A stretch of 64,000 nt of DNA, from sequence record LR756502.1; one strand, given 5' to 3'. A model generated the notes under the pieces. That model had not been told where the DNA came from. It was given only the letters and a program-made list of their open reading frames with translations, and searched no databases. Of this stretch, positions 16,431 to 36,248 are shown one piece after another. Made by a program: the position numbers and the translations under genes. The stretch's first letter is position 1. Every line of letters begins with the position of its first letter.

Positions 16431-17269
16431 TAAAACTTTCTAAATTTTGTATTTTTAAGCACTAGCTTTGTGTGTGTTGAGTGTGTTATGCTTACTCCAA
16501 AGTCATTTGTTACTTGTCTCTGTAGGAATGGTAATATGAAATCCTCCTCGAATGATACTTTATAACTAGATGGTATTTTTGATTTTAATGTCTCTAATGA
16601 AACTGGTAGATAGTTTTCATTTACTTCTCTATCCCAATTCTCGATATATTTATACTTTAATAGGTAATGCATAAATGTTCTATAGTTATCGTTAATAGAG
16701 CCCCACTTATCTTCAAATGATTTTAAAAATCTTTGGTCAGATATCTTTCTAACTTTCTTTACATCCTCTTTAAATTCGTTTATTTCATTCTTGTCAATCT
16801 TACTTGATGGTATCATATCTCTTATTGATATAAATTTGAAGTCTCCTCCAAATACCTGTTTTTCCCAGAAGAATTTTATAGTATTTGAATTTGAATATGA
16901 GTATACCTCATGTATTACCGAACTTAGATTTAGTAATGGTGATTTGTATCTTTGAATCTCACTAACCACCTCATTCCAATTACTCGTCAATGTGGCATTA
17001 TTTCCTAAAACCGACTTCGCCTTTGATAACATGGTTTGATCCAAATCATATCCTATTAATTTGGCTCTGGGGTTAGCTTTTGATACTTTTGATAGAAATG
17101 ATCCATCCGCACATCCAAAATCAACAATTACATCAAAATTAACTTTATCAATGAAAAACATCTTATCACTAAAAGACATACCCATCCCATCAATATATGA
17201 TTGTATGTCACTTATTGGTTTTTCTCCAACCAACTCTTCTAAGAATAACTGCCAGTTAAATATTTTCAT
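16430..17269 (-). CDS. Class I SAM-dependent methyltransferase, CTS-like N-terminus
   Basis: VIVDFGCADG, LIGYDLD, NLSSVIHEVYSY; MKIFNWQLFLEE. Confidence 0.8.
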   Translation of the reverse strand: MKIFNWQLFLEELVGEKPISDIQSYIDGMGMSFSDKMFFIDKVNFDVIVDFGCADGSFLSKVSKANPRAKLIGYDLDQTMLSKAKSVLGNNATLTSNWNEVVSEIQRYKSPLLNLSSVIHEVYSYSNSNTIKFFWEKQVFGGDFKFISIRDMIPSSKIDKNEINEFKEDVKKVRKISDQRFLKSFEDKWGSINDNYRTFMHYLLKYKYIENWDREVNENYLPVSLETLKSKIPSSYKVSFEEDFILPFLQRQVTNDFGVSITHSTHTKLVLKNTKFRKF

Positions 17270-18694: not shown

Positions 18695-19405
18695 ATGTTA
18701 TTGATAAATGATGATTGTTTCAACTATTTTAAGGAAATAAAGAATAATTCTATTGACTGTATAATAACAGACCCACCATATTTAATATCAAGAAAATCCA
18801 ACTTCAAAAATCACTCACATTCTACTGAGAAATTTATGGTTAATAAGTACGATATATCTATTGATTTTGGTGAGTGGGATAAAGAAGATATTGATTGGGA
18901 TTTACTATTTAAGGAGTATTATAGAGTTTTGAGAAATGGTGGTACATTGTTAATATTTTTTGATATTTGGAAATCAAATATAATTAAGGAATTTGCTGAG
19001 AAAAATAAGTTTAAGCAACCAAGAATTTGTTCTTGGGTAAAAAATAATCCAGTGCCTATTAATTCAAAGTTAAACTATTTATCAAACTCCACTGAATATT
19101 TTTTCACCTTTGTTAAGGATAAGAAGCCAACATTTAATTCAGAGTATGATAATGGTATATATAGATACCCACTCTGTCATGGGAAGGAAAGGTTGGATCA
19201 CCCGACTCAAAAGCCACTTGGATTGATATCCGACTTGGTATTAAAACATACAAATATTGGTGATCTTGTACTTGATACCTTTGCTGGTGTTGGTACAACT
19301 GGTGAGGCATGTTCTATTAATAATAGAGACTTTATTCTTATTGAAAGAGATAAAAAATATTTTGACATACTAAATAAAAGATTAAGTTGTTGTAAACAAA
19401 AGTAA
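18695..19405 (+). CDS. DNA adenine/N4-cytosine methyltransferase (beta class)
   Basis: IITDPPY precedes HPTQKP and VLDTFAGVGTT. Confidence 0.92.
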   Translation: MLLINDDCFNYFKEIKNNSIDCIITDPPYLISRKSNFKNHSHSTEKFMVNKYDISIDFGEWDKEDIDWDLLFKEYYRVLRNGGTLLIFFDIWKSNIIKEFAEKNKFKQPRICSWVKNNPVPINSKLNYLSNSTEYFFTFVKDKKPTFNSEYDNGIYRYPLCHGKERLDHPTQKPLGLISDLVLKHTNIGDLVLDTFAGVGTTGEACSINNRDFILIERDKKYFDILNKRLSCCKQK

Positions 19406-20212: not shown

Positions 20213-21796
20213 ATGCCAGCAACATTCAGTATAAATGTAGGTACTCCTACAGAATCAGCTAGAAAGCAAGACATCTATACTGTATTACAGGATATACCTG
20301 ATAATACTTCAAAACTAATAACACCAAGAGATGTCAGAGATGCTATATTTTCTGTTTGGGCCAATTCTGTTTTCAAACAGACCACTGGTACGTCATCTAT
20401 TGAATATATTGGAATTGATTCAAATAATCCTTCAAATAGAGATATTAAACAAAAAATATTCATTGGTAAAAGAAATTTCGGCGGAAATGATATAATGAAT
20501 AATTCTCTGCTATCTAGTTCAAATGAGACTGATATATTTCTATTCAATACTAAGTCTGATTCAACAACACAATCAGCTACTAAGATTTCAATACTATCCG
20601 GTACAGATTCTTCGTTATACGCATATGCTCCATATATAAAATCGGAGTTCATAAGTGATGGTGGTGTTGATAATATTGCATTGGATATAGTTAATCCATC
20701 TCTATTTGGTGGACCTATTAATATTTATAGTCCAAGTGGTAGAATTTCTATAAATAATATAATATTTCCAACAATTGCTGAGTCATCCGCATCCGCTTCG
20801 AACGGTAAAATACTTAGATATAGTGGTGTTTATCCAAATGGCTCACTTGTTTGGAGTAATGATACTGTTAGTATTGCTAATATTGGAGCAACTGGGTCAC
20901 CGACAAATATATTTGGTAGTCCTGTTCTAATAAATGGTTCACCGATGGTCTTTAGTGATGATACTCCACTTCCTTTACCTGTTGGTGGTCTTACACAAGG
21001 AAGTACATTTAGTGATGTTACTATTGTTGAAATGTTAAATAGAATACTTTATCCATATGTGCCTCCTGCTTTATCTTTATCACTAGTTAATAGTTCAGGA
21101 ACAACATATTCCGAATTTGGTACAACTGCCTCAATTGTTTTATCATATAGTATTACAAAGTATTCAGAGGATATATCAGATGCTTATATAGATGGTACAA
21201 CATTTTCTGGTATTACTTTTTCATCTTCACCTGGTGGTATTTTAAGCGGTACTTTGAGTGGGTCCACACATTCAGCTCTTATTGGGTCAAAAAGCTATGT
21301 TATGAAAGTATCTGATGATCCTGTTTGGTTATTTGCATCACATAGTGCAACTGCCTCACTTAATTTCGTTTATCCATCATTTTCTGGATTTAGTCCGGTT
21401 CCAATTTATGTTAGCCCATTATCTGGTTATGTTGCATCTACTCTTATAATGGCATCTAGTTCAATATCATCAAGAATTAGTATACCGTCACCTGGATCAC
21501 AATCAATATCAATATATTATAGTGGTAGTGGATATTTATTTTTTGCAATGCCCGAATCATATCCAGTTTTTAGATATGCTAAGGATCCTAATGGATACAT
21601 TATTCATGATTATGCTGATATATCATCCTCTGTGTTTTTTACCGGCACTCAGTCTAATAGCGTACCTTCATACCTAGGTCAATATCCTACAATAGTACCA
21701 ACTGGTGGTGGTCCAACATACTCACTTGCTGTTAGGTTTTGGGTAACAAACGCTACTTGTAGCTATCCTGGAGGTAATTTTGAATTTATATTCTAA
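20213..21796 (+). CDS. Ser/Thr-rich virion structural protein (paralog A)
   Basis: 527 aa, S/T/G rich; extensive similarity to next ORF; late promoter at 20183. Confidence 0.7.
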   Translation: MPATFSINVGTPTESARKQDIYTVLQDIPDNTSKLITPRDVRDAIFSVWANSVFKQTTGTSSIEYIGIDSNNPSNRDIKQKIFIGKRNFGGNDIMNNSLLSSSNETDIFLFNTKSDSTTQSATKISILSGTDSSLYAYAPYIKSEFISDGGVDNIALDIVNPSLFGGPINIYSPSGRISINNIIFPTIAESSASASNGKILRYSGVYPNGSLVWSNDTVSIANIGATGSPTNIFGSPVLINGSPMVFSDDTPLPLPVGGLTQGSTFSDVTIVEMLNRILYPYVPPALSLSLVNSSGTTYSEFGTTASIVLSYSITKYSEDISDAYIDGTTFSGITFSSSPGGILSGTLSGSTHSALIGSKSYVMKVSDDPVWLFASHSATASLNFVYPSFSGFSPVPIYVSPLSGYVASTLIMASSSISSRISIPSPGSQSISIYYSGSGYLFFAMPESYPVFRYAKDPNGYIIHDYADISSSVFFTGTQSNSVPSYLGQYPTIVPTGGGPTYSLAVRFWVTNATCSYPGGNFEFIF

Positions 21797-21798
21797 CT

Positions 21799-23259
21799 AT
21801 GCCAACATATAGTGTAAACATATCACAACCCACAGAGTCCACATCTTATATGGATATTGATTATATTATTAGTAAGTTGCCTGATAATACCGACAAGGAA
21901 ATAGATCCAAGAGACATTAGAGACGCTTCTATTTCTAATTGGGATGTCCCATCATTCAAGGAGACAAAGGCTACTGCTTCAACAATATCATATATTGGTA
22001 TTGATTCTGGTGATGCTGCTTATAGAGATGTGAAGTCGAAGATATTCTTTGGTAAAAGGGAGTTTAGCTCTAGTGAACTTATGAGCGTTTCATTATTATC
22101 ACCAACTATGAGTGATACTGATATATTTTTATTTAATACTAAGAAAGATTCAATATCTCAATTAAAAACAAGAATTTCTATACTAGCTGGAACCGATGCA
22201 TCTTTATATAGTGTTGCTCCATATTTGCAATCACAAACAGTTACTGGTACAGCTGGTCAGGTTTTATCTTTTGATATAGTTAACCCATCTGGTGGTGATA
22301 TATCAGTGACTAGTGACTATGGGACAGTATCACTAAATGGTATTATTTATCCAACCATTGTTGATACTGGATTATCTGCTTCTAGTAATAGAGTATTGAG
22401 GTATAATGATGGTCAATTATATTGGGATGATATTATAACAAACTTTTATGATACGGTTGGGACAAGTAGTTCTGTGTTGAATATATTTGGTACACCTGTT
22501 TTGATTAATGGATCACCAATTGAATTTACAAGTTCAAAGGAAACACCAGTTGCCTTTAATGGTGTTTCGATGGGTAGATCATTTGATAGTGCTGCTATAG
22601 TTGAGGTTTTAAGAGAGATATTATATCCTTATTTATCCCCACTTTGTACACTTAGTATAAATCAATCTGTGGCTGAATTTGGAACATTTCCATCAATCTC
22701 ACTAGATTATAGTGTAACTAAAAGAACACTTAGTGTTACAACTGTACTTAGTAATATGATACCCGGATCAATATCTCCAATAGTATCTAGTAGTAACGTG
22801 ACCGTATTTGGGTCAGCATCTGGTGTATACATATCAAATACTGATACTATATTTAAAATAACATCAAGTGATGGAACTCAATCCGCATCTGCATCACAGA
22901 CATTAAACTTCGTTTATCCTTACTTTTCTGGACTGCTTAGTAGTTCATCAATAGGATTTTCTGGACTATCCACATTGGATAAAATAGTGGATTCTCAAAA
23001 TGATCAGTTAGTTGGATTGATTGGATCTGGATATATTTACTTTATATATGATAATGACTATCCAGTTCTTAATAAAATATTGGCGGATGATATTGAAGTA
23101 TATGGTGCTAGTAGTAGTATGTCATCATTTACTCATAGTGTTGTTACACTAACATCACCGGATTGGCTTTGGGCCTCTCATCAGTTTAAGGTTTATAGAA
23201 GTATGACATCCTCATACTCTTTTATACCTCCTGCTGCAAATTATCAATTTAAGTACTAA
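21799..23259 (+). CDS. Ser/Thr-rich virion structural protein (paralog B)
   Basis: Shares PDNT.K.I.PRD.RDA, YIGIDS, TDIFLFNTK.DS, DIVNPS..GG with the previous ORF. Confidence 0.7.
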   Translation: MPTYSVNISQPTESTSYMDIDYIISKLPDNTDKEIDPRDIRDASISNWDVPSFKETKATASTISYIGIDSGDAAYRDVKSKIFFGKREFSSSELMSVSLLSPTMSDTDIFLFNTKKDSISQLKTRISILAGTDASLYSVAPYLQSQTVTGTAGQVLSFDIVNPSGGDISVTSDYGTVSLNGIIYPTIVDTGLSASSNRVLRYNDGQLYWDDIITNFYDTVGTSSSVLNIFGTPVLINGSPIEFTSSKETPVAFNGVSMGRSFDSAAIVEVLREILYPYLSPLCTLSINQSVAEFGTFPSISLDYSVTKRTLSVTTVLSNMIPGSISPIVSSSNVTVFGSASGVYISNTDTIFKITSSDGTQSASASQTLNFVYPYFSGLLSSSSIGFSGLSTLDKIVDSQNDQLVGLIGSGYIYFIYDNDYPVLNKILADDIEVYGASSSMSSFTHSVVTLTSPDWLWASHQFKVYRSMTSSYSFIPPAANYQFKY

Positions 23260-23264
23260 AAAAT

Positions 23265-23273
23265 TAATATATA
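23265..23273 (+). promoter_or_regulatory. Putative late promoter TAATATATA
   Basis: 4 nt before ATG 23278. Confidence 0.7.
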
Positions 23274-23277
23274 ATAC

Positions 23278-24726
23278 ATGCCAATTAATATAATAGACGG
23301 ATTTAATCTAAATAAATTAGGACCAATTGATACAAGAATGGTTGCTACCGGGTCTTCTGCTAGAAATTCTATAGCATGGAAGTATGATGGTTTAAAAGTA
23401 TTTGATACATCTGATAGAAAAACATATGTTTGGGCAACATCATCATGGACAGTGGAGGGTGAATTGGGATTGGTTGATGGTTATGTTCCTAAATTCTCAT
23501 CCGCTGGTTTAACAAACTCTATTATTTATGCAACATCTAGCTTTATTGGTCTTAACACAACTGATCCAAAGTCATCTATGCAAATTAATAGTGCTTATGG
23601 TAACCCATTTAGTATAGATAAGTCTACTACTGGTACAATATTAGGTCATAATTATTATAGTGGCGGATCATTTAGTAGTGATGGTTCTTCATACTTTGAG
23701 ATGAAATCTAATGGTGCTTTAATTATAAGAAACAGAGCATCTTCTGGATCATTTATAGATACTATGTATATAACGGCTACTGGTAGTGTTGGTATTGGGG
23801 TTACAGTTTCTACATTACCAGCATTTAAATTGGATGTTAGAAATGGTCTAATAAGCTCAAACTCCTCAACATTAATATCTAATATTCAGTGTGCTGTTAC
23901 TACATGGAAGGATGATGTTCATTTTTTAATTGGTAATATTAACTCAGGTACGTTTGTTAACGCTGGTGCTTTGCAAGTAACATCCGGTGGTGGTTATGGC
24001 AATGGTAGTATTGGTACTACACCATACAACCTACTATTACAACCAGCTGGTGGTCAGGTTTACTTTGGTGGTGGTTCTGTTGGTACTCCAGCTTTATCGT
24101 TTACATCAAGTGGTACTACTGGTATTTATTCACCAGCTGTTGGTGATTTTGCTGTATCTATACTTGGATCTCAAAAAGTTAGACTTACTTCTACCGGTGA
24201 TTTCTATGCTAATATTCATAATATTTCTGGTGCTGGTACATCATCATATCTAGGTCCTATTATATCATCTGGTACATATAACCCAGTTGCTGGATTCTTA
24301 ATTAATTGTACTGTCTCTACTATAAATAAAGTATCTTTATTTGGTGCTTATATTATAAGCCCACTTAACTCATATTGGTCAAGAGTTGGTAATGTTGTTA
24401 CTGTTTCTGGTAATCTTGGAATTATACCAACTACCGCTAATATAGCTACATCTTTTCAGTTAAGCTTACCAATACCTACATCATTTAGTTCTCTTGGTAA
24501 TCCTTTGGTTGATTATACTACTTGGAGACTAGGTGGGTCCGGAACAGTGATTACATCAACTGGGGTATCATCATCTAGTTGTCATATATATGGTAATGGT
24601 ATCTCAACTATTAATGGTAGTTCTACAGTTTCTTTTCAGTTTTATCCACCTGTTGGAACGGTTGGTACTACACAGAATTTTTTAAGTTATACATATCAGT
24701 ATCTACTTGATGCTCAGGCTGCTTAA
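23278..24726 (+). CDS. Tail-fibre-like virion protein
   Basis: MPINIIDGFNL..PIDTR start; fibre-like G/S/T beta repeats (FIGLNT, SVGIG, RLTSTG, WSRVGNVVTV). Confidence 0.65.
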   Translation: MPINIIDGFNLNKLGPIDTRMVATGSSARNSIAWKYDGLKVFDTSDRKTYVWATSSWTVEGELGLVDGYVPKFSSAGLTNSIIYATSSFIGLNTTDPKSSMQINSAYGNPFSIDKSTTGTILGHNYYSGGSFSSDGSSYFEMKSNGALIIRNRASSGSFIDTMYITATGSVGIGVTVSTLPAFKLDVRNGLISSNSSTLISNIQCAVTTWKDDVHFLIGNINSGTFVNAGALQVTSGGGYGNGSIGTTPYNLLLQPAGGQVYFGGGSVGTPALSFTSSGTTGIYSPAVGDFAVSILGSQKVRLTSTGDFYANIHNISGAGTSSYLGPIISSGTYNPVAGFLINCTVSTINKVSLFGAYIISPLNSYWSRVGNVVTVSGNLGIIPTTANIATSFQLSLPIPTSFSSLGNPLVDYTTWRLGGSGTVITSTGVSSSSCHIYGNGISTINGSSTVSFQFYPPVGTVGTTQNFLSYTYQYLLDAQAA

Positions 24727-25406
24727 TCTGAAATTTTATCAAACCACCAATTGAAGTATATGAAGTTATCTCCTACTAGGTTGTAGAGTTCATTATCATG
24801 TCTGATAACCATTTTTGTATCAAAGGATCTTACTAATTCTACTTCAGCTCCTTTGTCCATATTTAGCATTTTACCAGTATCTACACTATAACAGATAATA
24901 TCATTGTTTATTAATTTATATTTACCTTGTTCTGGTTTAAGCCAAGTTTTAATAACCTTTGCTATTAATCCTTTCGTTTTTATGACCCATTCTTTTGTCT
25001 GAAATAAATCTTTATCTTTAAATACCTCAGAGTGTACATCAGGGTATGTTAGTATATTTTTAATAACTGCCCAATATTCCTCCTCATCAATAACAAAAGA
25101 TACATAAGCATCATAGTTGATGTTATCAACCTTAACTATCCTTAGAACCTTCATACTTTTAATATTTTGGCTCTCTAATCCAATTTTGCTTCTTAGATTC
25201 TTATATGCGTTAGTTCCTGATATGTTAAATAGAATATCATCAATTCTAGACATGGCTTGTCTTAGACTGTCTTGGTGTTTATCAAATGCGTTTATGGATA
25301 ATTGTGGATCATCTACATGCATTGATGGTTGTACAGAATCAGCATTCATCCTTTGTAGGTTAAACTCGGTGAATTCTAATATTAATCTGCTTTTTCTATC
25401 TTTCAT
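24723..25406 (-). CDS. Hypothetical protein (late)
   Basis: 227 aa; RLILEFTEF; TAATATATA at 25416-25424. Confidence 0.75.
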   Translation of the reverse strand: MKDRKSRLILEFTEFNLQRMNADSVQPSMHVDDPQLSINAFDKHQDSLRQAMSRIDDILFNISGTNAYKNLRSKIGLESQNIKSMKVLRIVKVDNINYDAYVSFVIDEEEYWAVIKNILTYPDVHSEVFKDKDLFQTKEWVIKTKGLIAKVIKTWLKPEQGKYKLINNDIICYSVDTGKMLNMDKGAEVELVRSFDTKMVIRHDNELYNLVGDNFIYFNWWFDKISD

Positions 25407-25415
25407 ATATGAATA

Positions 25416-25424
25416 TATATATTA
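25416..25424 (-). promoter_or_regulatory. Putative late promoter TAATATATA
   Basis: Upstream of 25406. Confidence 0.7.
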
Positions 25425-25474
25425 AATAGTTACAACTATTTTATGCAAAAATCGTATAAAAAATAATATGTATT

Positions 25475-25786
25475 ATGAAGAAAATTAGAAAATTTAATGA
25501 ATCTGATGAGCAGGTAGATATTTCTGGTGAAAGAATTGATGAGATAATATCTGAACTAAAGGAGTTTGCCTCTTTGATAGATGCAAAAAGAGAAATGGTT
25601 GAGAGTCTATCAAATGAGATGAATAACTATAAGGGGTTATCAAAGAATGGTAATGACCAAATTGATGACTCTGTATCTAACCTACAATTGATTAAAAGCT
25701 ATATTGTTGATTGTAATGAAAAGATTGATAATGTTGTTAATAACATGAATGATTACAATGAAAATGGTAGAAAGTACTTATACTAA
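25475..25786 (+). CDS. Coiled-coil protein, CTS-like N-terminus
   Basis: MKKIRKFNES; heptad pattern. Confidence 0.7.
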   Translation: MKKIRKFNESDEQVDISGERIDEIISELKEFASLIDAKREMVESLSNEMNNYKGLSKNGNDQIDDSVSNLQLIKSYIVDCNEKIDNVVNNMNDYNENGRKYLY

Positions 25787-25830
25787 TAAACTTTAATTTT
25801 TACAAACAATATAAAAAATAAACTGGTAAC

Positions 25831-27756
25831 ATGAATTTACTGAATCTAATTAAGAAAAACTTTGAGTCTGAGATAAATGACTTATCTATTCAAGAGTATT
25901 TGAATATGTGTAAGAAGGACAAGAAGATATACTCATCTCCATCTGAGAGAATGTTAGAATCTATTGGTGAGCCTGAAGTAATAGAGACTGAGTTAGATGA
26001 AAGACTAAGCAGAATCTACTCAAATAAAATTATTAAAAGATATCCAGCTTTTGCTGAGTTCTATGGAATGGAAGAGACAATTGAACAGATTGTTTCATTC
26101 TTTAGACACGCGTCTCAGGGATTGGAGGAGAAGAAGCAAATACTTTACTTACTTGGTCCTGTTGGTGGTGGTAAGTCTTCACTGGCTGAGAGATTGAAGC
26201 AATTAATGGAGAGAAATTCAATCTATGTTCTTGTTTCTGACGCTGGTGAAGTTTCTCCTGTTTGGGAGAGTCCGCTTGGTTTATTTGTAAACTATAGAGC
26301 CGAATTAGAATCTGAGTATGGTATTGAAAAAAGATATATTCCTTCTTGTCCATCTCCTTGGGTCACAAAGAGATTACAAGAGTATAATGGTGATATAACA
26401 AAGTTTTCTGTTAGAAAAGTTAAGATGTCAATACAGTCACAAATTGGTATATCTAAAGTAGAACCAGGTGATGAGAATAATCAAGATATATCAGCACTTG
26501 TTGGTAAAGTAGATATTCGTAAACTTGCTGAGTTTCCACAAAATGATGCTGATGCTTATAATTACTCAGGATCTTTATGTAAGTCAAACCAAGGTCTTAT
26601 GGAGTTTGTTGAGATGTTTAAAGCACCTATAAAAGTATTACATCCTTTATTAACAGCTACTCAGGAGGGCAATTATAATGGAACTGAGGCTATACCAGCT
26701 ATTCCATTTCAGGGTATTATATTAGCCCACTCAAATGAGTCTGAGTGGGAGTCATTTTCTAATGATAAAAAGAATGAGGCTTTCCTTGATCGTGTTTATA
26801 TTGTAAGAGTTCCTTATTGTTTAAGAATTGCCGAGGAGGTTCAGATTTATAAAAAATTATTAAATAGCTCATCATTATCACAAGCTTCTTGTGCACCACA
26901 GACATTAGATTTACTAGCTCAGTTTTGTGTAATGACTAGAATGAAGAGACCGGAAAACTCATTATTATACTCTAAAATGAGGGTTTATAATGGTGAGAGT
27001 TTGAAGGAAAGTGATCCAAAGTCTAAATCACTACAAGAATATAAAGATGATGCTGGTATTGCTGAGGGTATGAATGGTATATCTACTAGATTTGCATTCA
27101 AAGTACTTTCTAAGGTATTTAATCATGATTCAGAAGAAGTAGCTGCTAATCCTGTACATTTATTCTATGTTCTTGAACAAGAAATTGTTAAGATACAAAT
27201 GCCAAAAGATGTTGAGGAGTACTATTTGAATATACTTAAGTCTACAATAACATCAAAATATGCTGATTTTATTGGAGATGAGATACAAAAGGCTTATGTT
27301 GATTCATATCAAGAGTATGGTCAAAATTTATTCGAAAGATATGTTACATACGCTGACCACTGGTGTCAAGATAATGATTTTCGTGATCCTGAAACTGCTC
27401 AGCAGTTTGATAGGGCTACTCTTAATGAAGAGTTGGAGAAAATTGAAAAACCAGCAGGTATTGCTAACCCAAAAGATTTCAGAAATGATGTTGTTCAATT
27501 TTATTTAAGACATAGAGCTAAAAATGGTAAATCTCCATCTTGGAATTCATATGAGAAAATTAAAAATGTAATAGAAAAAAGAATCTTCTCAAAAACAGAA
27601 GATCTTATTCCAGTTATATCGTTTACGAGTAAAGCATCAAAAGATGAAGAAAAGAAACATAGTGAGTTCATTAATAGAATGAAGGAAAGAGGATATACTA
27701 GAAAGCAAATAAAGTTACTTACTGATTGGTATTTAAGAATTAGAAAGTCATCCTAA
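25831..27756 (+). CDS. prkA: PrkA/YeaG family AAA+ protein (annotated serine kinase)
   Basis: YGMEETIEQIV, LLGPVGGGKSS, EPGDENNQDIS, EFVEMFKA, AHSNESEW, AFLDR. Confidence 0.95.
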   Translation: MNLLNLIKKNFESEINDLSIQEYLNMCKKDKKIYSSPSERMLESIGEPEVIETELDERLSRIYSNKIIKRYPAFAEFYGMEETIEQIVSFFRHASQGLEEKKQILYLLGPVGGGKSSLAERLKQLMERNSIYVLVSDAGEVSPVWESPLGLFVNYRAELESEYGIEKRYIPSCPSPWVTKRLQEYNGDITKFSVRKVKMSIQSQIGISKVEPGDENNQDISALVGKVDIRKLAEFPQNDADAYNYSGSLCKSNQGLMEFVEMFKAPIKVLHPLLTATQEGNYNGTEAIPAIPFQGIILAHSNESEWESFSNDKKNEAFLDRVYIVRVPYCLRIAEEVQIYKKLLNSSSLSQASCAPQTLDLLAQFCVMTRMKRPENSLLYSKMRVYNGESLKESDPKSKSLQEYKDDAGIAEGMNGISTRFAFKVLSKVFNHDSEEVAANPVHLFYVLEQEIVKIQMPKDVEEYYLNILKSTITSKYADFIGDEIQKAYVDSYQEYGQNLFERYVTYADHWCQDNDFRDPETAQQFDRATLNEELEKIEKPAGIANPKDFRNDVVQFYLRHRAKNGKSPSWNSYEKIKNVIEKRIFSKTEDLIPVISFTSKASKDEEKKHSEFINRMKERGYTRKQIKLLTDWYLRIRKSS

Positions 27757-27899
27757 TGACTCAATATTATTTAGATACTAGGGGTTATAAGAATATTTAT
27801 GGATACCCGGCTCTTTTTGCCTACTATACTAAGATAGATAGTAGAAGGAAAAAAATTAGAAAAATCAAAAAATTACTAGATGGGTATAAATATAGTTGA
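27756..27899 (+). CDS. 47-aa basic micro-protein (not in ORF track)
   Basis: TAATG overlap with prkA stop; MTQYYLDTRGYKNIYGYPALFAYYTKIDSRRKKIRKIKKLLDGYKYS. Confidence 0.55.
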   Translation: MTQYYLDTRGYKNIYGYPALFAYYTKIDSRRKKIRKIKKLLDGYKYS

Positions 27900-29142
27900 T
27901 AGAAGGAAGAACCCAAGTGGTAAGTCATCTAGTAATAGACAGAGGTTTCTGAAGAGAATAGAAGACCAGATCAAAAGGGCTCTTCCAGATATTGTTAAAA
28001 ATACAAGCGTTAAAGACTTAACATCATCTAAAGATAAAGTTAAGGTTCCTGTGAAGGGTATTGATGAGCCACAATTTACATATGATAGAGAGTCTGGTGA
28101 TAAAAAGTGGGTGCATCCTGGTAATAAAGAATACATACAAGGTGATACAATTGAGAAGAAGAAAAGCGGACAGGGTGGTAAGGGTCGAAAAGGATCAAAT
28201 GATCCATCAACATCAGAAGATGAGTTTAGTGTTTCTATATCAAGAGATGAGTTTCTTGACTACTTCTTTAAGGACCTAGAGCTACCAGACATGATTAAGA
28301 AACACCTTAATACAATCGTTAATTGGAAGCAAAAAAGAGCAGGATATTCACAGTATGGGAATCCAAGTAGATTAAATGTCGTTCGCTCTTATAAAAACTC
28401 TATGGCTAGAAAAATAGCATCACAGATATTTTTTGATAAGAAGATAAAGGAAATAGAAGATAAATTAAAAGATAATAGTTTATCAGATGATGATAGATTA
28501 AAATTAGAAACTGAATTGACCAAGTTCAAAAATATGAGACTGGCTGTTGGGTTTATGGAAGAGGTTGATCTTAGATATAATAATTTTGAGAAGTATCCTG
28601 TTCCTACCACATGCGCTGTTATGTTTTGTATAATGGACGTTTCTGGTTCAATGGGTGAGAAAGAGAAAGATATTGCTAAGAGATTCTTTATGTTACTCTA
28701 TATGTTTTTAACTAAACAGTATGAAAAGATTGAGATTGTCTTTATAAGACACCACACAGAAGCTAAGGAAGTTAGTGAAGATGAGTTTTTTAATTCACGA
28801 GAGTCTGGTGGAACTGTTGTAGTGCCTGCTCTTGAAATGATGAGTAAGATAATAAAAGAAAGATACTCAAAGGATTGGAATATCTATGCTGCTCAAGTAT
28901 CTGATGGTGATGTTTGGGATAAATCGGATGCTGATGACTGTTATAAGATATTAGATGCTGATATTCTAAATAAGATACAATATATGATATATATTGAGGT
29001 TTGTAGAACAAATGATGGTGACCTATGGGACAACTACGATGCTCTATCTCAGAAAAGAAATAACTTTCAGATTGGTAAAATTCATAGTGTTGGTCAGATA
29101 TGGACTGTATTTCAAGACTTCTTTAAAAAGAAAACCGCATAA
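27880..29142 (+). CDS. yeaH: YeaH/YhbH (DUF444) vWA-domain protein
   Basis: IVDRR..GKS..NRQRFL, HPGNKEY, FCIMDVSGSM (MIDAS DxSxS), FIRHHTEA, SGGTVV, QVSDGD. Confidence 0.93.
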   Translation: MGINIVDRRKNPSGKSSSNRQRFLKRIEDQIKRALPDIVKNTSVKDLTSSKDKVKVPVKGIDEPQFTYDRESGDKKWVHPGNKEYIQGDTIEKKKSGQGGKGRKGSNDPSTSEDEFSVSISRDEFLDYFFKDLELPDMIKKHLNTIVNWKQKRAGYSQYGNPSRLNVVRSYKNSMARKIASQIFFDKKIKEIEDKLKDNSLSDDDRLKLETELTKFKNMRLAVGFMEEVDLRYNNFEKYPVPTTCAVMFCIMDVSGSMGEKEKDIAKRFFMLLYMFLTKQYEKIEIVFIRHHTEAKEVSEDEFFNSRESGGTVVVPALEMMSKIIKERYSKDWNIYAAQVSDGDVWDKSDADDCYKILDADILNKIQYMIYIEVCRTNDGDLWDNYDALSQKRNNFQIGKIHSVGQIWTVFQDFFKKKTA

Positions 29143-29264
29143 TGGCCGTTTGTAGGATAATAGGTAGATTTATAAGGCCTGGATATACTCCAATGGATCC
29201 ACCTAAAAGAATTAAAAAACGACTAGGTAAAATCTATAAAATTTTAAAAATTATCAATAAATGA
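29142..29264 (+). CDS. 40-aa basic micro-protein with RxxKIxxIL tail (not in ORF track)
   Basis: TAATG overlap with yeaH stop and ATGA overlap with next gene; MAVCRIIGRFIRPGYTPMDPPKRIKKRLGKIYKILKIINK. Confidence 0.6.
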   Translation: MAVCRIIGRFIRPGYTPMDPPKRIKKRLGKIYKILKIINK

Positions 29265-29446
29265 AACCAGGAGTAATATTTGTCCCATACATTATTCAGC
29301 ACTTACCAGTGACCACTATTCAATGTGGTACATTTTCGCCTAATAAGACACTTCGTAGTAGATATTCAAGTATTTTTCTCAAGTCTAAAAACTTGATTAG
29401 AAAAGACAAAATAGAAAAGATATTAAATGAAAAACCCCTCGATTGA
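29261..29446 (+). CDS. 61-aa protein resembling the C-terminus of a T4-like major capsid protein, plus C-terminal tail
   Basis: PGVIFVPYI...GTFSPNKTLRSRY; IRKDKIEKIL. Confidence 0.6.
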   Translation: MKPGVIFVPYIIQHLPVTTIQCGTFSPNKTLRSRYSSIFLKSKNLIRKDKIEKILNEKPLD

Positions 29447-29454
29447 GGGGTTTT
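29431..29454. terminator. Bidirectional intrinsic terminator
   Basis: AAAACCCCTC-GATT-GAGGGGTTTT. Confidence 0.85.
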
Positions 29455-29456
29455 AT

Positions 29457-30005
29457 TTATTTATTAAATTTTAATTTGAATAGTGTTTTGTATGTAAGAG
29501 CTACAACCTCATCAATTATATTATGTAAGTGAGTATCTTCCTGTGATATACATTGTCTAGCACTTTTAATATAAGTTGCTAGTTCCTCAAAATAAGCCAC
29601 TTTATCTTTTGTCTTTGTTTCTTTTGTGTCAATAATATCATATCCATCAACAATACCATATTGTCCTTGGTATGTTTCGATTAACTCATCAATTAGTTCA
29701 AGTACATCTTCATAAAAAGTACCTAGTGCCATATGTGATGCATAAGATCCTTCATCTCCTCCAACTTGTAAGTGATAAATATGAGCCATCTCTCTAGATT
29801 CAAATAGCTTAGAGAATAGCTTAGTTGGATTACACTCAGAGCTTTGTTCAGATTCGGTATTTTCTGGTAGATTTGCCTTTGGTTCTTGATCCATGTTTGT
29901 CTTATCAACATCTTGTTGAGGTTGACCAAATTGATCCATCTCATTTATCTTTTTGATAATACCTTTTGGTACTTTAATGTCAGAGAACTTTTTGAATGAT
30001 GACAT
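29457..30005 (-). CDS. Ferritin/Dps-like four-helix protein (DUF5856-like)
   Basis: SREMAHIYHLQ, HMALGTFYE, IDELIETYQG, NIIDEVVAL. Confidence 0.75.
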   Translation of the reverse strand: MSSFKKFSDIKVPKGIIKKINEMDQFGQPQQDVDKTNMDQEPKANLPENTESEQSSECNPTKLFSKLFESREMAHIYHLQVGGDEGSYASHMALGTFYEDVLELIDELIETYQGQYGIVDGYDIIDTKETKTKDKVAYFEELATYIKSARQCISQEDTHLHNIIDEVVALTYKTLFKLKFNK

Positions 30006-30025
30006 ATGATTTTATTATTTTTTTT

Positions 30026-30034
30026 TATATATTA
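30026..30034 (-). promoter_or_regulatory. Putative late promoter TAATATATA
   Basis: Upstream of 30005. Confidence 0.7.
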
Positions 30035-30037
30035 AAT

Positions 30038-30433
30038 TTATTGACCAAGTAATTTATCTTTTAATACCTTATGTATTAAAATTCCATCAAATCCGGCTTT
30101 TCTTAGATCATGATAAAATTCAAGTTTTTCTGTGGATGTTGGCATTCTTTCTCCAAATTCCACATCCCATGATGACTTAATTATTTCTTCCGGTGTTTTA
30201 TCATCATCTTTACCAGTATAAGCTTGGCCTCCGTAAGTAGACTCCAGTAATTCATCTGTGTCAATATTATTAATTGTATAACTGGATTGATTCTTAATAG
30301 AAGATAGTGTTGAGTCTGCAATATATGATGCTTCTCCTTCATTTGATGCCTCTATCACAAATTCAACCTGAGCAGAAACTCTAAAGTTTCTTTTATTATC
30401 TATCTCTTCTAATAGTTTAGTAAACTTCTTCAT
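30038..30433 (-). CDS. Hypothetical protein, CTS-like N-terminus
   Basis: MKKFTKLLEE; TAATG coupling. Confidence 0.75.
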   Translation of the reverse strand: MKKFTKLLEEIDNKRNFRVSAQVEFVIEASNEGEASYIADSTLSSIKNQSSYTINNIDTDELLESTYGGQAYTGKDDDKTPEEIIKSSWDVEFGERMPTSTEKLEFYHDLRKAGFDGILIHKVLKDKLLGQ

Positions 30434-31575
30434 TAAAAATTATCCTCTTCTGGGGCTATTGAATATAACTTCCCTAATTTTTTTCTTAAATAAATACCAG
30501 AATCGTTTATCCTTTTTTCAAAGTATTTAACAAATTCATCACATTTCATCTTTTTTAATACCTTTAGTGGTATTGTTGGTGTTTCATTAAATTCCTTCAG
30601 TGACTTTTCATATTGTTGAACCCACATATTTTTCAATCTCTCTTTAAGAGGGTGTGATAGAACGCCACCACCCGGTCTTATTAGTGTTGTTTCTGTAGGT
30701 CTACTTCCTATATACTTGTTTATTTCTAAATCTAATTCTTTTATGAAGGCTTCCGATTTAAAATTTTCCATCTCTTTTGCCATTTTCCAAGCCTCGGTCT
30801 TAGTTATTTTTTCAGGTCCATATTTATTTACCCAAAATGCCGCTTCTTGTACTTGTGCATTTAGTTCGTGTGGTTCGGACGCATATAGATAGAATGTGAA
30901 TTTACGCATCCATTGATTGTATACATCATTAGGTATACCCCATTTATTTACATCAGCCGCTGTTATGGATGATGCTGGTCCTTTTGTTTCTATTCTTCCT
31001 TTACCCTTAACCAATATTCTATTATAATACTCATATAAGTGATTTAATTCATGCCATATACATTCTTCAAGTTCATCCTGAATTTTCTTTTTATATAGAC
31101 CCATATTAAAGTTTGGTGATAAATCAATTGAAAAGACGCATGATAATATTAATCCATGATCTGATACCTCTTTTACTGGAGGAGCCTTTCTAGTATATCC
31201 TGCCCAATTACTTTTACCAAATCCTATAGCCCATCCACCAACCGAGAAGGCCAATGTTTTACCCTCTTTTCTTCTTCCAAGAATTATATACTTATATTTC
31301 TTTTCAAACTCTGTATCGGCCATTTTATTAAATACAGTATTTATCTCTATACCAACTACGGGAAATTGAGCATATAAAACTTTATCTGTTATATTTGGTC
31401 GTATCTTTGTATAAGTTATATTAACCTGATCATCTATTTTTTTATCATCAGATTGATAGAACTCAAGAAATTCATTCCATACTTTATTAAATATAGGCTC
31501 TGTGTAAAATAGTGTTGGTTCAGCAAGTCCTACCTTTTCATTTAATTGGAAGTTTTTAAAATTAATAATCCCCAT
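30433..31575 (-). CDS. Zincin-like HExxH protein, CTS-like N-terminus
   Basis: MGIINFKNFQLNE; IWHELNH and downstream PHELNA. Confidence 0.65.
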   Translation of the reverse strand: MGIINFKNFQLNEKVGLAEPTLFYTEPIFNKVWNEFLEFYQSDDKKIDDQVNITYTKIRPNITDKVLYAQFPVVGIEINTVFNKMADTEFEKKYKYIILGRRKEGKTLAFSVGGWAIGFGKSNWAGYTRKAPPVKEVSDHGLILSCVFSIDLSPNFNMGLYKKKIQDELEECIWHELNHLYEYYNRILVKGKGRIETKGPASSITAADVNKWGIPNDVYNQWMRKFTFYLYASEPHELNAQVQEAAFWVNKYGPEKITKTEAWKMAKEMENFKSEAFIKELDLEINKYIGSRPTETTLIRPGGGVLSHPLKERLKNMWVQQYEKSLKEFNETPTIPLKVLKKMKCDEFVKYFEKRINDSGIYLRKKLGKLYSIAPEEDNF

Positions 31576-31580
31576 AAGAA

Positions 31581-31589
31581 TATATATTA
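31581..31589 (-). promoter_or_regulatory. Putative late promoter TAATATATA inside a hairpin loop
   Basis: 5 nt before ATG 31575; flanked by CCCATAAGA/TCTTATGGG. Confidence 0.7.
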
Positions 31590-31623
31590 AATATCTTATG
31601 GGGATTTTTTAACTTTTGATTTT

Positions 31624-34385: not shown

Positions 34386-36248
34386 ATGGGTATATTTAAG
34401 TATAATCAATTTATAGGAAAACCACTTACTGAGAATCTACAAGGGGCTAAAAAGCTAATGAAGGATAGATATTTGATGCTAAAATCAATAAAAGATCTAA
34501 ACCTTTTGACTGGTAAATTAAAACAGGAGTGGGATGATGGTGAAAGAAGATCATTTTCTCTTAAGGACTTTACCGAGGATCAACAAGATCTTATTAAGGC
34601 TAAATTCAGAGAGATAAAACTAACTGATGAAGAGGCTAGAAATATTGAAAAAGATCCTGGATTTATTAAGATAAGAGAGCTTGTAAAAGATACTTTGGGT
34701 TGGTGTTATATCTTTACATATTTCTACTATGTAGAAAATGTGCCATTTGAGGAACTAGAAGATATTTACAAGAAGTTGTTGGATTTTAGACCATTGTTGA
34801 GTAGATTACCTAAACCATTGGATAATAATTTCATAAATCCTAATATCAAAAATAACAATGAGGTTCTAGTTGATGAGTTGGAGAAAATTAACAGATATAG
34901 AAAGCTTAAGAGGTTTGTTGATGAACTTCCTGGTGATATGAGGAGAGAATTTGCTTCAACTTCAGAGCTTTATAAAGGAAAAATTGAGGATATAGCTGTT
35001 GCATTTGACGAGTTTGGTAAAAATGCAGAGACTGGTGTTGTTGATGAAAAAGAAAAATCTACACTACAAAAGTTATTCTTCTCTAAGATTAAAAGATATA
35101 AAGTTTTAAGAGAGGTTATACCACAAGCAGAGAACTATATTAAAGGATTGGATAATAAGAATGTTGTTAAATTCTATAAGGTAATTGAGAAGTGTAATGA
35201 AATGTTTGGTATTGTTGGTGCTGATATAGTATTTGATGAAAATGGTATACTAATACTTGATATTAAATCTTTCCAAGCTAATAAGATGTTAAATTCTAAT
35301 ACATCACATTGTATAGCTTCATATGATGGACATTGGTCCAGTTATGTTGGTACTGAGCAAGATAACAAATTTAATAAGCAATACTATATCTATAACTTTA
35401 ACTTATCATCTTCCGATAATAAGTCTATTATTGGTATAACAATTGAGCCAAATCAAAGAATAAATGCTTGTCATCTTAAAAATGACGCAGGATTTAGTGG
35501 TGATATAAGAAACTGCCTAAAGGGATGGGAAAGACAATATGATATAAAGGAAGATCTTTGGACTGTATTATCCCCTATGTCTGATGAAGACATAGCTAAG
35601 AAAAAGAGAAGAATTGCTGCTAATAGAGAAATCATAAAACCAAAAATAAAGTTGGATGAGATTCAAAAGTTGGTTAGAGAAGAAGGAGCTGATGTTAATA
35701 GAGAAAATGGTAAGCCATTGTTGAACGCTGTTCAGGAAGGAAGCTATGATAAGGTTAAATATCTACTAGAACTTGGAGCATCTCCTAATTTGAGACAAAA
35801 AGCAGAAGCAGTTATTAACCAAGCCAAGGACCTTGAAATGATTAAACTTTTGGTTAATAAGGGAGCTGAGTTGACGAGTCAAGTATTTAAGAATATTATG
35901 GAAGATAATTCAGCTGTTGAATATTGTTTACAAGCTGGTATGGATCCTAACTTTGAGAACTCATTGCCAGTAAGAACTTGTTGTAAACAAGGTAGTCTAG
36001 ATACACTTAAGTTACTTATTAAGTATGGTGCCCAAATTAAACATGCTAGAAATATGCCAATGGCTTGGGCAGCTGAGAATAATAGAAAGGACTTTATGGA
36101 GTATATGATAGGACTCGGTGTTGATACTGGATTCAGTTCTATAAAGAAATGGATTAGTCACACTACTAAGTTTGCTAAACCAGAAGATAAGAAAGAAATG
36201 ATGGACTATATAGATAAACTTATAGATTCAAAAAAAGTAACTGCGTAA
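34386..36248 (+). CDS. Ankyrin-repeat protein, CTS-like N-terminus
   Basis: GADVNRENGKPLLNAVQEGSYDKVKYLLELGASPN and further ankyrin-like units; central SHCIA motif. Confidence 0.8.
   Translation: MGIFKYNQFIGKPLTENLQGAKKLMKDRYLMLKSIKDLNLLTGKLKQEWDDGERRSFSLKDFTEDQQDLIKAKFREIKLTDEEARNIEKDPGFIKIRELVKDTLGWCYIFTYFYYVENVPFEELEDIYKKLLDFRPLLSRLPKPLDNNFINPNIKNNNEVLVDELEKINRYRKLKRFVDELPGDMRREFASTSELYKGKIEDIAVAFDEFGKNAETGVVDEKEKSTLQKLFFSKIKRYKVLREVIPQAENYIKGLDNKNVVKFYKVIEKCNEMFGIVGADIVFDENGILILDIKSFQANKMLNSNTSHCIASYDGHWSSYVGTEQDNKFNKQYYIYNFNLSSSDNKSIIGITIEPNQRINACHLKNDAGFSGDIRNCLKGWERQYDIKEDLWTVLSPMSDEDIAKKKRRIAANREIIKPKIKLDEIQKLVREEGADVNRENGKPLLNAVQEGSYDKVKYLLELGASPNLRQKAEAVINQAKDLEMIKLLVNKGAELTSQVFKNIMEDNSAVEYCLQAGMDPNFENSLPVRTCCKQGSLDTLKLLIKYGAQIKHARNMPMAWAAENNRKDFMEYMIGLGVDTGFSSIKKWISHTTKFAKPEDKKEMMDYIDKLIDSKKVTA

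What the first reader, a model, noticed from the sequence alone, without database searches (positions are those of the whole stretch)
29261..29446. 61-aa mini-protein resembling the major capsid protein C-terminus, fused to the shared tail
Seen: PGVIFVPYI-x(11)-GTFSPNKTLRSRY. Established: T4-like gp23 C-termini read like G[IL][FY]Y[AC]PY[VI]P-x(~10)-[ST]FQP.[IM]GFKTRY. The similarity is by eye only. The peptide is followed by RKDKIEKIL and lies in a non-late operon. Inference: a capsid-fragment mimic. It might be a decoy for host defences that sense capsid protein, a dominant-negative against co-infecting T4-like phages, or a chaperone substrate mimic; a duplication remnant is the alternative.
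Basis: partly seen in the sequence, partly recalled or inferred. Interest (0 to 1): 0.7.

Follow-up and report, generated by a model that had tools for sequence, protein, structure and literature searches.

The report
Mini-protein copied from capsid protein end
A 61-residue gene in a 642-kb "huge" phage belongs to a large, unnamed family of small proteins copied from the last stretch of the phage major capsid protein; it is conserved yet fast-changing, and its function is not known.

Summary
ORF 29261-29446 (+) encodes 61 aa, and residues 2-36 match the C-terminus of the resident phage's own Gp23-family major capsid protein (MCP): 46% identity, and it is the only significant hit among 385 window ORFs (E=6e-7).

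The window comes from LR756502.1, a 642-kb Mahaphage-clade genome, not a classical T4-like phage.

p61 belongs to a family of at least 105 protein clusters (55-110 aa, all "hypothetical"). Six of eight first-found members hit Pfam Gp23 on their own. The family profile's best PDB hit is T4 gp23 residues 441-479.

The "tail" (R-K-x-K-I-x-K-I-L/F, predicted helix) lines up with the extreme C-terminus of T4-like cyanophage MCPs, so here it is probably the native MCP end. In relatives the same module also sits inside the hairpin loop or behind a different MCP fragment.

The gene closes a variable accessory operon, convergent with a DUF5856 gene. It is under purifying selection (dN/dS 0.2-0.5) but far more variable than the nearly invariant MCP C-terminus. 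In one near-identical genome pair it was swapped by recombination.

Function is untested. My best guess is an MCP mimic that engages an MCP-binding partner, most likely a host sensor. Rivals are a competitor phage's MCP, own-capsid assembly, or an unrelated role.

The parts
29261..29446 (+). p61, a mini-MCP gene (61 aa plus stop); short 'type A-prime' member of the family (no N-terminal LGKK extension, no A-P linker)
   Evidence: ORF. Family membership E=7e-11 with an HMM that excludes it. Closest relative is P0008/L006, 55-56% identical, in the same gene order.
29264..29368 (+). MCP-like segment (residues 2-36), equivalent to the two long beta strands that precede the A-P linker in T4 gp23
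   Evidence: 45.7% identity to own MCP residues 513-546. Family profile aligns to T4 gp23 residues 441-479 of 521. The gp23 A-P linker is residues 486-502 (PMC9546572).
29390..29428 (+). T module (residues 44-56, NLIRKDKIEKILN), predicted helix
   Evidence: T profile E=1e-4, the only hit among 1520 six-frame segments. Helix 31-56 in the p61 model and 58-73 (pLDDT about 89) in the P0003 model. Aligns with the C-terminal end of T4-like cyanophage MCPs.
29431..29454 (.). Intrinsic terminator hairpin shared by the convergent p61 and DUF5856 genes; the p61 stop codon lies at the loop/3'-arm junction
   Evidence: 10-bp stem, 5 G-C pairs, T-run. The same arrangement is seen in seven related loci.
29142..29264 (+). 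p40, the upstream partner mini-ORF. Its start overlaps the YeaH stop (TAATG) and its stop overlaps the p61 start (ATGA)
   Evidence: Conserved in L006 (44 aa; RPGY.P ... KRL.KIYKIL). Not detected by the mini, partner or T profiles, so family membership is unproven.
27756..27899 (+). p47, a mini-ORF between PrkA and YeaH that overlaps the YeaH start
   Evidence: Positional homologues at L001 5763-5903 and L006 1395-1535. Marginal hit to the partner-ORF profile, E=0.053.
25831..27756 (+). PrkA (AAA_PrkA plus PrkA C-terminal domain); cargo gene of the operon
   Evidence: Pfam E=2.9e-167 and 2.4e-66.
27880..29142 (+). YeaH-like DUF444 protein; cargo gene of the operon
   Evidence: Pfam DUF444 E=5.8e-147.
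25475..25786 (+). Conserved 103-aa gene that opens the cassette operon in all related loci
   Evidence: Homologues of 105-110 aa in L004, L007, L008, L016, L024, L027 and L028.
29457..30005 (-). DUF5856 (Dps-like, 'starvation-inducible regulator' PHROG) gene, convergent with p61
   Evidence: Pfam E=1.1e-16 and phrog_858 E=1.9e-19. Of 80 IMG/VR loci found through this gene, 33 carry a mini-MCP on the convergent strand.

Best explanation
SHOWN.
- p61 is a real, separately translated small gene. It belongs to a large family of 55-110-aa proteins in Mahaphage-type huge phages.
- The family descends from the 3' end of a Gp23-family MCP gene. It keeps the two long beta strands that precede the A-P linker, sometimes the linker itself, and the terminal motif T.
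- p61 sits last in a variable accessory operon: 103-aa gene, cargo (here PrkA and YeaH), partner mini-ORF, mini-MCP, terminator. It is probably translationally coupled (TAATG and ATGA overlaps).
- The family keeps the residues that are invariant in MCPs (G, P-Y, S-R-Y) and one face of the T helix (R, K, I, I). The rest changes fast, and alleles are exchanged by recombination.

INFERRED (mechanism).
- The protein is largely unfolded on its own and acts as a mimic of the MCP C-terminal region.
- It would occupy a partner that normally recognises that region of newly made MCP. The T helix would give affinity or a second contact.
- The most likely partner is a host factor that senses or binds gp23-type capsid protein, which would make this a counter-defence antagonist.

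The identity part I hold at about 0.9. The mimic-of-MCP-for-a-host-sensor part I hold at about 0.3. The confidence given below is for the whole statement.
For: Homology:
- p61 against own MCP and MCP-C-terminus HMMs.
- tblastn of family member P0003 hits the C-terminal end of annotated gp23/major capsid genes in 2,439 phage records, best E=1e-6.
- Pfam Gp23 matches 6 of 8 members, best E=9.8e-9.
- phrog_138 'major head protein' positions 360-410.
- The best PDB hits are T4 gp23.

Real gene:
- 8, then 105 clusters at 90% identity. There are 430 representatives at 50% with E<=1e-3. Most of the best 150 are 56-110 aa, and all 52 that were read begin with M.
- dN/dS is 0.2-0.5 in 21 pairs.
- The frame is open in 33 of 33 occurrences found through the neighbouring DUF5856 gene rather than through the mini-protein itself.
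- Overlapping stop/start codons.

Accessory and fast-changing:
- Present in 33 of 80 DUF5856-anchored loci.
- The last 70 MCP residues are 89% identical between LR756502 and LR745206, while their mini-proteins are 36% identical.
- L004 versus L007: flanking genes have dS 0.16-0.23 and dN<=0.01, but the mini gene has dS 0.71 and dN 0.38.
- The cargo at the same site varies: PrkA-YeaH, GH16, or a 2OG-oxygenase-like gene.

T is conserved as a peptide: third codon positions are free, with entropy 1.28 bits against 0.53 and 0.59 at positions 1 and 2.

Models: the MCP-like part is predicted as coil and T as helix.

Defences that sense gp23 exist, for example CmdTAC (PMC11618068).
Against: - No functional, expression or interaction data exist for any member.
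- A fragment that binds an MCP sensor could just as well trigger it as block it.
- No known defence is shown to recognise this part of gp23. The region bound by CmdC is unknown.
- Both structure models have low overall confidence (pLDDT 63 and 70), so 'unfolded alone' is weak evidence.
- dS is saturated in most pairs, so the dN/dS values are rough.
- Hypervariability and patchiness fit competition between phages equally well.
- T also occurs on small ORFs with no detectable MCP piece, so the active part might be T and the MCP-like part a passenger.
- The host is only predicted (Bacteroidetes, PMC7162821), so its defence repertoire could not be examined.
Confidence: 0.35

Rival explanations
1. 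Weapon between phages. The fragment co-folds or co-assembles with the MCP of co-infecting gp23-type phages and poisons their capsid assembly (dominant-negative superinfection interference). The resident MCP, whose C-terminus differs, is spared.
For: - Several members (L007, L008, L010, L016) score higher against T4-like MCP C-termini (40-47 bits) than against the resident-clade MCP profile (31-35 bits).
- The T motif matches the end of T4-like cyanophage MCPs but not the end of Mahaphage MCPs.
- The gene is hypervariable, patchy and swapped by recombination.
Against: - p61 and its closest relatives are most similar to the resident-clade MCP: 35.8 bits against 22.7 for T4-like. They would therefore be expected to interfere with their own capsid.
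- Over 139 members, the best pairwise match is a Mahaphage MCP for 60, one GC-rich huge-phage MCP type for 58, and T4-like for only 6.
- No interaction data exist.
Confidence: 0.2
2. Own-capsid helper. The fragment would be a trans-acting assembly factor for the resident MCP, for example a holdase or timer that masks the surface normally covered by the MCP's own C-terminal strands, or a minor capsid or cement component.
For: - p61 keeps exactly the residues that are invariant in the resident MCP segment (PG.IFVPY, TF.P...LRSRY).
- The neighbourhood includes tail-fibre-like genes.
Against: - The resident MCP C-terminus is nearly invariant (89%) while the mini-proteins diverge to 36%.
- The gene is missing from 47 of 80 anchored loci.
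- Among the large uncultured genomes in GenBank it was seen only in LR756502.1 and LR745206.1. In the others, searches returned only the MCP itself, at limited sensitivity.
- The gene lies 50 kb from the MCP/scaffold module.
Confidence: 0.12
3. The active part is the T helix, and the MCP-like part is historical baggage. T-bearing peptides would be a family of small basic helical proteins with a role unrelated to capsids: binding nucleic acid or a host protein, or acting as coupling or leader ORFs that set translation of the next gene. Their repeated sequence would also serve as a substrate for cassette shuffling.
For: - T occurs at the C-terminus, inside the hairpin loop (type B), behind a different MCP fragment (L024 4097-4300; Gp23 profile 165-195, 26.5 bits, above the Pfam cut-off), and behind sequences with no MCP signal.
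- Small beta1+T ORFs overlap the ATG of YeaH, SpoVR, a 2OG-oxygenase-like gene and the mini-MCP itself.
- PrkA-YeaH sit at different loci in sister genomes.
Against: - G, P-Y and S-R-Y in the MCP-like part are nearly invariant over 41 diverse members. Baggage would not keep them.
- In p61 and type A members, T is followed by a terminator, not a gene.
- Third codon positions in T are free, so it is not a DNA-level site.
- T-like sequence is not a general feature upstream of genes in the window.
Confidence: 0.23
4. Non-functional scar. The ORF would be a leftover 3' piece of an old second MCP gene, or of a recombination event, kept open by chance or by overlapping signals (terminator, coupling).
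For: - The last five codons are dictated by the terminator stem.
- p61 is the shortest, most eroded member: it has no LGKK N-terminus, no linker, and no Pfam hit.
- Relatives carry several different MCP pieces at this locus.
Against: - At about 31% G+C, roughly 8% of random codons would be stops (my own estimate from base composition, not a tool result). A 61-codon frame would then stay open by chance in well under 1% of cases. Yet the frame is open in all 33 independently anchored loci and in at least 105 clusters.
- dN/dS is below 1.
- MCP-invariant residues are retained after saturating synonymous divergence.
- No DNA similarity to the MCP gene remains.
Confidence: 0.1

Closest known systems
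Gp23-family major capsid protein (Pfam PF07068; T4 gp23, PDB 5VF3/6UZC/7VS5) and the resident MCP of LR756502.1
   Same: Homologous to the C-terminal 55-75 residues. The conserved motifs G-x3-P-Y and S/T-R-Y are the same, and the terminal R-[KR]-x-[KR]-I-E-N-[IL]-[FM] motif matches that seen in T4-like cyanophage MCPs.
   Different: It is 61 aa rather than 450-620 aa. It lacks the N-arm, E-loop, spine helix, insertion domain and most of the A domain, so it cannot form an HK97 fold. It is encoded 50 kb from the capsid module, is hypervariable, and is present in only some genomes.
T4 gp24 (vertex protein, a full-length paralogue of gp23)
   Same: Both are second, diverged copies of MCP sequence within one phage genome.
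   Different: gp24 is a complete HK97-fold protein with a structural role at the vertices (PMC9546572). The mini-proteins are fragments. No second full-length Gp23 paralogue was found in LR756502.1 at E<=1e-3.
Gol peptide of T4 gp23 / Lit protease, CmdTAC and CapRel: defences triggered by capsid protein
   Same: They show that short regions, or newly made forms, of an MCP are recognised by host immunity (PMC11618068 and PMC9712102). That is the kind of partner a mimic would address.
   Different: Those are host sensors of full-length MCP. No phage-encoded MCP fragment is part of them. From my own knowledge (not tested here), the Gol region lies near the N-terminal part of gp23, whereas the mini-proteins correspond to residues 441-521.
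Mimic-type anti-defence proteins such as T7 Ocr
   Same: They are small, phage-encoded, accessory mimics of a molecule that host systems recognise (PMC12409349).
   Different: Ocr mimics DNA and is a folded dimer. Here the model would be a protein fragment, and no target is known.
Promoter-stem-loop (PeSL) cassettes of T4-type phages (from my own knowledge, not tested here)
   Same: Short repeated units flank small or accessory genes in hyperplastic regions and are thought to mediate modular shuffling.
   Different: Here the repeated unit is translated and conserved as a peptide, not as a promoter or hairpin.

Membership tests
Pfam PF07068 Gp23 (major capsid protein) | Significant match to the family profile | tested here: inconclusive
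   p61 alone has no Pfam hit at E<=1. Six of eight relatives hit on their own, best E=9.8e-9. P0002 gives 21.2 bits against a cut-off of 24.4. Custom MCP-C-terminus HMMs hit p61 at E=5.8e-7 and 2.6e-4.
Pfam PF07068 Gp23 (major capsid protein) | Complete HK97-type capsid fold (N-arm, E-loop, P and A domains, insertion domain; about 450-620 aa) | tested here: not met
   p61 is 61 aa. Relatives cover only profile positions 308-356 of 376. The models show coil plus one helix.
Pfam PF07068 Gp23 (major capsid protein) | Encoded in the head module beside the scaffold/protease genes | tested here: not met
   The resident MCP is at record 227452-229167, preceded by a 699-aa repeat-rich protein. In phage PTm1 the homologous MCP follows the gene annotated 'prohead core scaffolding protein and protease'. 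p61 is at record 277261-277446, in a PrkA/YeaH operon.
Mini-MCP family (defined here; P0001-P0241 subset) | Own start codon 0-12 residues before G-x3/4-P-Y, then S-[RK]-Y; total length 55-110 aa | tested here: met
   MKPGVIFVPY...RSRY, 61 aa, with an in-frame TAA before the ATG.
Mini-MCP family (defined here; P0001-P0241 subset) | T module R-[KR]-x-[KR]-I-x-[KN]-I-[FL] | tested here: met
   RKDKIEKIL at residues 47-55; T profile E=1e-4.
Mini-MCP family (defined here; P0001-P0241 subset) | Last gene of the operon, ending in a terminator shared with a convergent DUF5856 gene | tested here: met
   The same holds in L004, L006-L008, L010, L024 and L027. In L016 and L028 one or two genes lie between the mini gene and DUF5856.
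Anti-defence decoy / sensor antagonist | Binds a host defence component and lowers its activity | not testable with these tools
   The host and its defence genes are unknown. No interaction or phenotype data exist.
Gol-type Lit activator | Corresponds to the Gol region of gp23 | tested here: not met
   The family profile aligns to gp23 residues 441-479 of 521. The Gol region is N-terminal (my own knowledge).
Leader or attenuator peptide (Rfam Phe_leader and similar) | Match above the family gathering score | tested here: not met
   Best score 27.9 bits against a gathering score of 55. The match covers only the terminator hairpin.
SpoVR remnant (third gene of the PrkA-YeaH-SpoVR operon) | Residual protein or DNA similarity to SpoVR downstream of YeaH | tested here: not met
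   tblastn E=5.1. blastn matches only the last 27 nt of yeaH. An intact SpoVR lies elsewhere in the genome.

The most novel reading that the evidence does not exclude
Huge phages carry a modular family of 'capsid-fragment baits'. Different pieces of the major capsid protein (the C-terminal hairpin in p61; an A-domain helix segment in L024 4097-4300) would be joined to a common helical module T, kept in a recombination-prone accessory locus, and used to neutralise host immune sensors (or rival phages) that recognise gp23-type capsid protein. That would be the first protein-fragment self-mimicry counter-defence described in phages.
Probability: 0.25. Interest if true: 0.85.

Novelty: new variant of a known kind. 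Interest (0 to 1): 0.62.

Why it matters
Capsid proteins are among the commonest triggers of bacterial immunity, and how phages protect an essential, hard-to-mutate trigger is an open question.

This family is conserved, diversifying and recombining, and it is made from exactly such a trigger. It is carried by the largest known phages and is annotated everywhere as 'hypothetical'. That gives a concrete candidate for protection by self-mimicry, or alternatively for capsid-level interference between phages.

Even if neither holds, three things follow:
- Small-protein families can arise by keeping a fragment of a structural gene.
- There is now a sequence signature (G-x3-P-Y ... S-R-Y ... R-K-x-K-I-x-K-I-F) for annotating several hundred unnamed genes.
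- The family marks a cassette-shuffling hot spot, with PrkA/YeaH/SpoVR, GH16 and oxygenase-like cargo, in Mahaphage genomes.

Tried and rejected
1. SpoVR remnant. In sister genome LR745206.1, YeaH is followed by SpoVR, so I suspected that 29142-29446 was a decayed SpoVR. My first test used a wrong reading frame (void). The repeat shows no similarity, and SpoVR is intact 242 kb away.

2. Recent duplication of the resident MCP 3' end. There is no DNA similarity beyond 7-mers.

3. The tail as a DNA-level element (ribosome-binding region, promoter or recombination site). It sits just before the next ATG in several ORFs. However, it is not found upstream of other genes, and its third codon positions vary freely while the amino acids stay.

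4. The tail as a repeat within the window. There is no DNA repeat.

5. Direct database hits for p61 in Pfam, PHROGs and PDB: none.

6. Structure prediction. Both models are of low confidence, so I did not run fold searches.

7. 'The mini-proteins resemble T4-like MCPs more than their own.' This is true for some members and for the tail, but not for p61 and not for the family as a whole.

8. Promoter class of the operon. It could not be separated from the MCP promoter by motif.

9. Literature. I found no description of MCP-fragment mini-proteins.

10. Known RNA families in 29000-29600. Only sub-threshold matches to the terminator.

Full report
**Where the window comes from.** The region 25800-31600 is 100% identical to LR756502.1, an unannotated 642,428-bp 'uncultured phage' (window position = record position minus 248,000). 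This is one of the four largest complete genomes reported in PMC7162821. That paper places them in the Mahaphage clade and predicts Bacteroidetes hosts. The window is about 31% G+C and contains no N.

**The observation.**
- It is the last gene of a run: PrkA (25831-27756), a 47-aa ORF (27756-27899), a YeaH/DUF444 gene (27880-29142), a 40-aa ORF (29142-29264), then p61.
- The YeaH stop overlaps the p40 start (TAATG), and the p40 stop overlaps the p61 start (ATGA).
- The p61 stop lies in a 10-bp-stem intrinsic terminator (29431-29454), which also ends the convergent DUF5856 gene at 29457-30005.

**Is the capsid likeness real?** p61 alone gives nothing in Pfam, PHROGs or PDB sequence searches. 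tblastn against 50,697 phage records, however, aligned residues 2-36 to the C-terminal end of roughly 560-570-aa proteins in sister huge phages. Those proteins are Gp23-family MCPs (Pfam PF07068, E about 1e-25).

The resident MCP lies 20 kb left of the window (L005 2492-4207, 571 aa).
- p61 2-36 aligns with MCP 513-546 at 45.7% identity.
- Against all 385 window ORFs of at least 30 aa, a profile of Mahaphage MCP C-termini finds only p61 (E=5.8e-7). A profile of T4-like MCP C-termini also finds only p61 (E=2.6e-4).

**A family, not a one-off.** The orthologue in LR745206.1 (75 aa, same position beside DUF5856) was found first. It hits Pfam Gp23 positions 308-356 of 376 (E=2.2e-4).
- A two-sequence profile recovered eight proteins of 61-84 aa.
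- A 41-sequence profile recovered 105 clusters at 90% identity, every one 'hypothetical'.
- A full HMMER scan of 1.84 billion representatives gave 430 hits at E<=1e-3. Most of the best 150 are 56-110 aa, and all 52 that I read begin with M just before the motif.
- Six of the first eight members hit Pfam Gp23 on their own (best E=9.8e-9).
- Three of four tested hit phrog_138 'major head protein' at positions 360-410 of 444.
- P0003 hits the 3' end of annotated gp23/major-capsid genes in 2,439 phage records.
- The family profile's top PDB hits are T4 gp23, residues 441-479 of 521, at E about 0.1.
- A family profile built without p61 and its nearest relative scores p61 at E=7e-11.

**Anatomy.** In T4 gp23, residues 486-502 are the linker between the A and P domains (PMC9546572).
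- The mini-proteins therefore correspond to the two long strands before that linker (G-x3-P-Y ... S-R-Y), the linker itself (K-x-V-N-x3-Y-G; deleted in p61, P0008 and L016), and the final segment.
- That final segment is the 'tail' T: N-L-I-R-K-x-K-I-E-[KN]-I-[FL]. It lines up residue for residue with the extreme C-terminus of T4-like cyanophage MCPs, and BLAST alignments run through it.
- In p61, then, the tail is most simply the native end of a gp23-type protein, not a fusion.
- The residues after T (E-K-P-L-D, or E-N-P-T-D in relatives) are the terminator stem read as protein.
- AlphaFold models are of low confidence overall (pLDDT 63 and 70). They agree that T is a helix (pLDDT about 89 in the P0003 model) and that the MCP-like part is coil.

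**T is nevertheless a module.**
- In many relatives (type B, the commonest among IMG/VR loci), T sits in the loop between the two strands and is absent from the end.
- In L024-L026 a 67-aa ORF joins a different MCP piece to T. That piece matches Gp23 profile 165-195 at 26.5 bits, above the Pfam cut-off, and phrog_138 positions 216-252.
- Small ORFs of 39-58 aa carry a W-M-P or P-G-x-x-x-x-P remnant plus T. They lie just upstream of, and overlap the ATG of, the mini-MCP gene, YeaH, a 2OG-oxygenase-like gene and, in LR756502.1 itself, SpoVR.
- A profile of four such partner ORFs finds p61 (E=1.2e-4) and, marginally, p47 (E=0.053) in the window, but not p40.
- Thirty distinct DNA instances of T show free third codon positions (entropy 1.28 bits against 0.53 and 0.59). 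The invariant Ile uses ATT 16 times, ATA 12 times and ATC twice. T is thus conserved as a peptide, not as a DNA site.
- Within the window the 'shared tail' of p47 and p40 is not statistically detectable.

**Locus and evolution.**
- In every locus the order is: a conserved 103-110-aa gene; optional cargo (PrkA-YeaH in the window and L006, GH16 in L027, a 2OG-oxygenase-like gene in L024, nothing in L004, L007 and L008); partner ORF; mini-MCP; terminator; convergent DUF5856. L030 is an exception, sitting between thyA and an IF3 gene.
- In 80 IMG/VR loci found through DUF5856 rather than through the mini-protein, 33 carry a mini-MCP on the convergent strand, and all 33 are open frames.
- dN/dS is 0.2-0.5 in 21 pairs, although dS is mostly saturated.
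- The resident MCPs of LR756502.1 and LR745206.1 are 76% identical overall and 89% over the last 70 residues. Their mini-proteins are 36% identical.
- L004 and L007 are 93-100% identical in 60-nt windows on both sides of the cassette, but drop to 47-72% inside it. Flanking genes have dS 0.16-0.23 and dN<=0.01, against dS 0.71 and dN 0.38 for the mini gene. That means allele replacement by recombination.
- No DNA similarity remains between p61 and the resident MCP gene.
- Pairwise, p61 is closest to Mahaphage MCPs. Other members are closest to a GC-rich huge-phage MCP type or, rarely, to T4-like MCPs.
- Among GenBank phage records, the mini-gene was seen only in LR756502.1 and LR745206.1.

**Interpretation.**
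- Shown: a real, conserved small gene family derived from the gp23 C-terminal region. It is accessory, rapidly diversifying and recombining, with a peptide-level helical module.
- Inferred: it works through its likeness to unassembled MCP. It is an accessory gene, and its variation does not follow the nearly invariant resident MCP. A core assembly role is therefore less likely than an antagonistic one.
- Gp23-sensing defences exist (CmdTAC, PMC11618068). I therefore rank 'antagonist of a host MCP sensor' first (about 0.3), an unrelated T-driven role second, then interference with rival phages, an own-assembly helper, and a scar.
- None of these is tested. A binding fragment could also activate a sensor, which is the main weakness of the leading idea.

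Noticed in passing
window 29142-29264 (+) and 27756-27899 (+): Two mini-ORFs (40 and 47 aa) are wedged between PrkA, YeaH and p61, with overlapping stops and starts. Both are conserved in the closest relative, L006. p47-type ORFs also separate PrkA and YeaH in LR745206.1. Their link to the mini-MCP family is marginal (p47, E=0.053) or undetected (p40).
   Followed up: partly
L118 2359-2535 (LR756502.1 record 519805-519981), outside the window: SpoVR of this genome lies 242 kb from PrkA-YeaH. It is preceded by a 58-aa ORF (DYWMP...NRKKRIEKIL) of the beta1+T type that overlaps the SpoVR start. In LR745206.1 the three genes form one operon. The starvation-type genes appear to be shuffled at T-bearing mini-ORFs.
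   Followed up: partly
L024 4097-4300 (also L025, L026): A 67-aa ORF consists of an internal Gp23 segment (Pfam profile 165-195, 26.5 bits, above the cut-off) followed by the T module. It sits upstream of a 189-aa 2OG-Fe(II)-oxygenase-like gene. This is a second kind of capsid-fragment mini-protein.
   Followed up: partly
window 20213-24726 (+): Three tandem paralogous genes (527, 486 and 482 aa; repeat families D3 and D6). In related loci, neighbouring genes carry a Peptidase_S74 domain, so these are likely tail-fibre or spike genes next to the cassette.
   Followed up: no
window 55993-61083 (+), repeats at 60001-61063: A 1696-aa ORF has many 15-nt-periodic Trp/Gly-rich repeats (W-x-x-G-x units).
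   Followed up: no
window 51497-51592: An exact 48-nt tandem duplication lies inside the minus-strand ORF 51043-52152.
   Followed up: no
window, e.g. 25412-25440; upstream of many genes on both strands: A TTAATATATA(T)-type motif lies 10-25 nt before many start codons, and no Shine-Dalgarno sequences are evident. It sits between the divergent pair 24723-25406(-) and 25475-25786(+), and is conserved in L004, L007, L008 and L016. This is a candidate phage promoter.
   Followed up: partly
window 16397-16433, 29428-29464, 50358-50394: Three terminator hairpins share a similar sequence (repeat family D5).
   Followed up: no
P0036 (metagenomic protein, 143 aa): An IS3-type transposase N-terminal helix-turn-helix is read in frame into a mini-MCP. 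This suggests an insertion sequence next to one family member.
   Followed up: no
window 18695-19405 (+) and 34386-36248 (+): An N6/N4 DNA methylase (Pfam E=7.8e-32) and a 620-aa ankyrin-repeat protein. The latter is conserved downstream of the cassette in several related loci.
   Followed up: no
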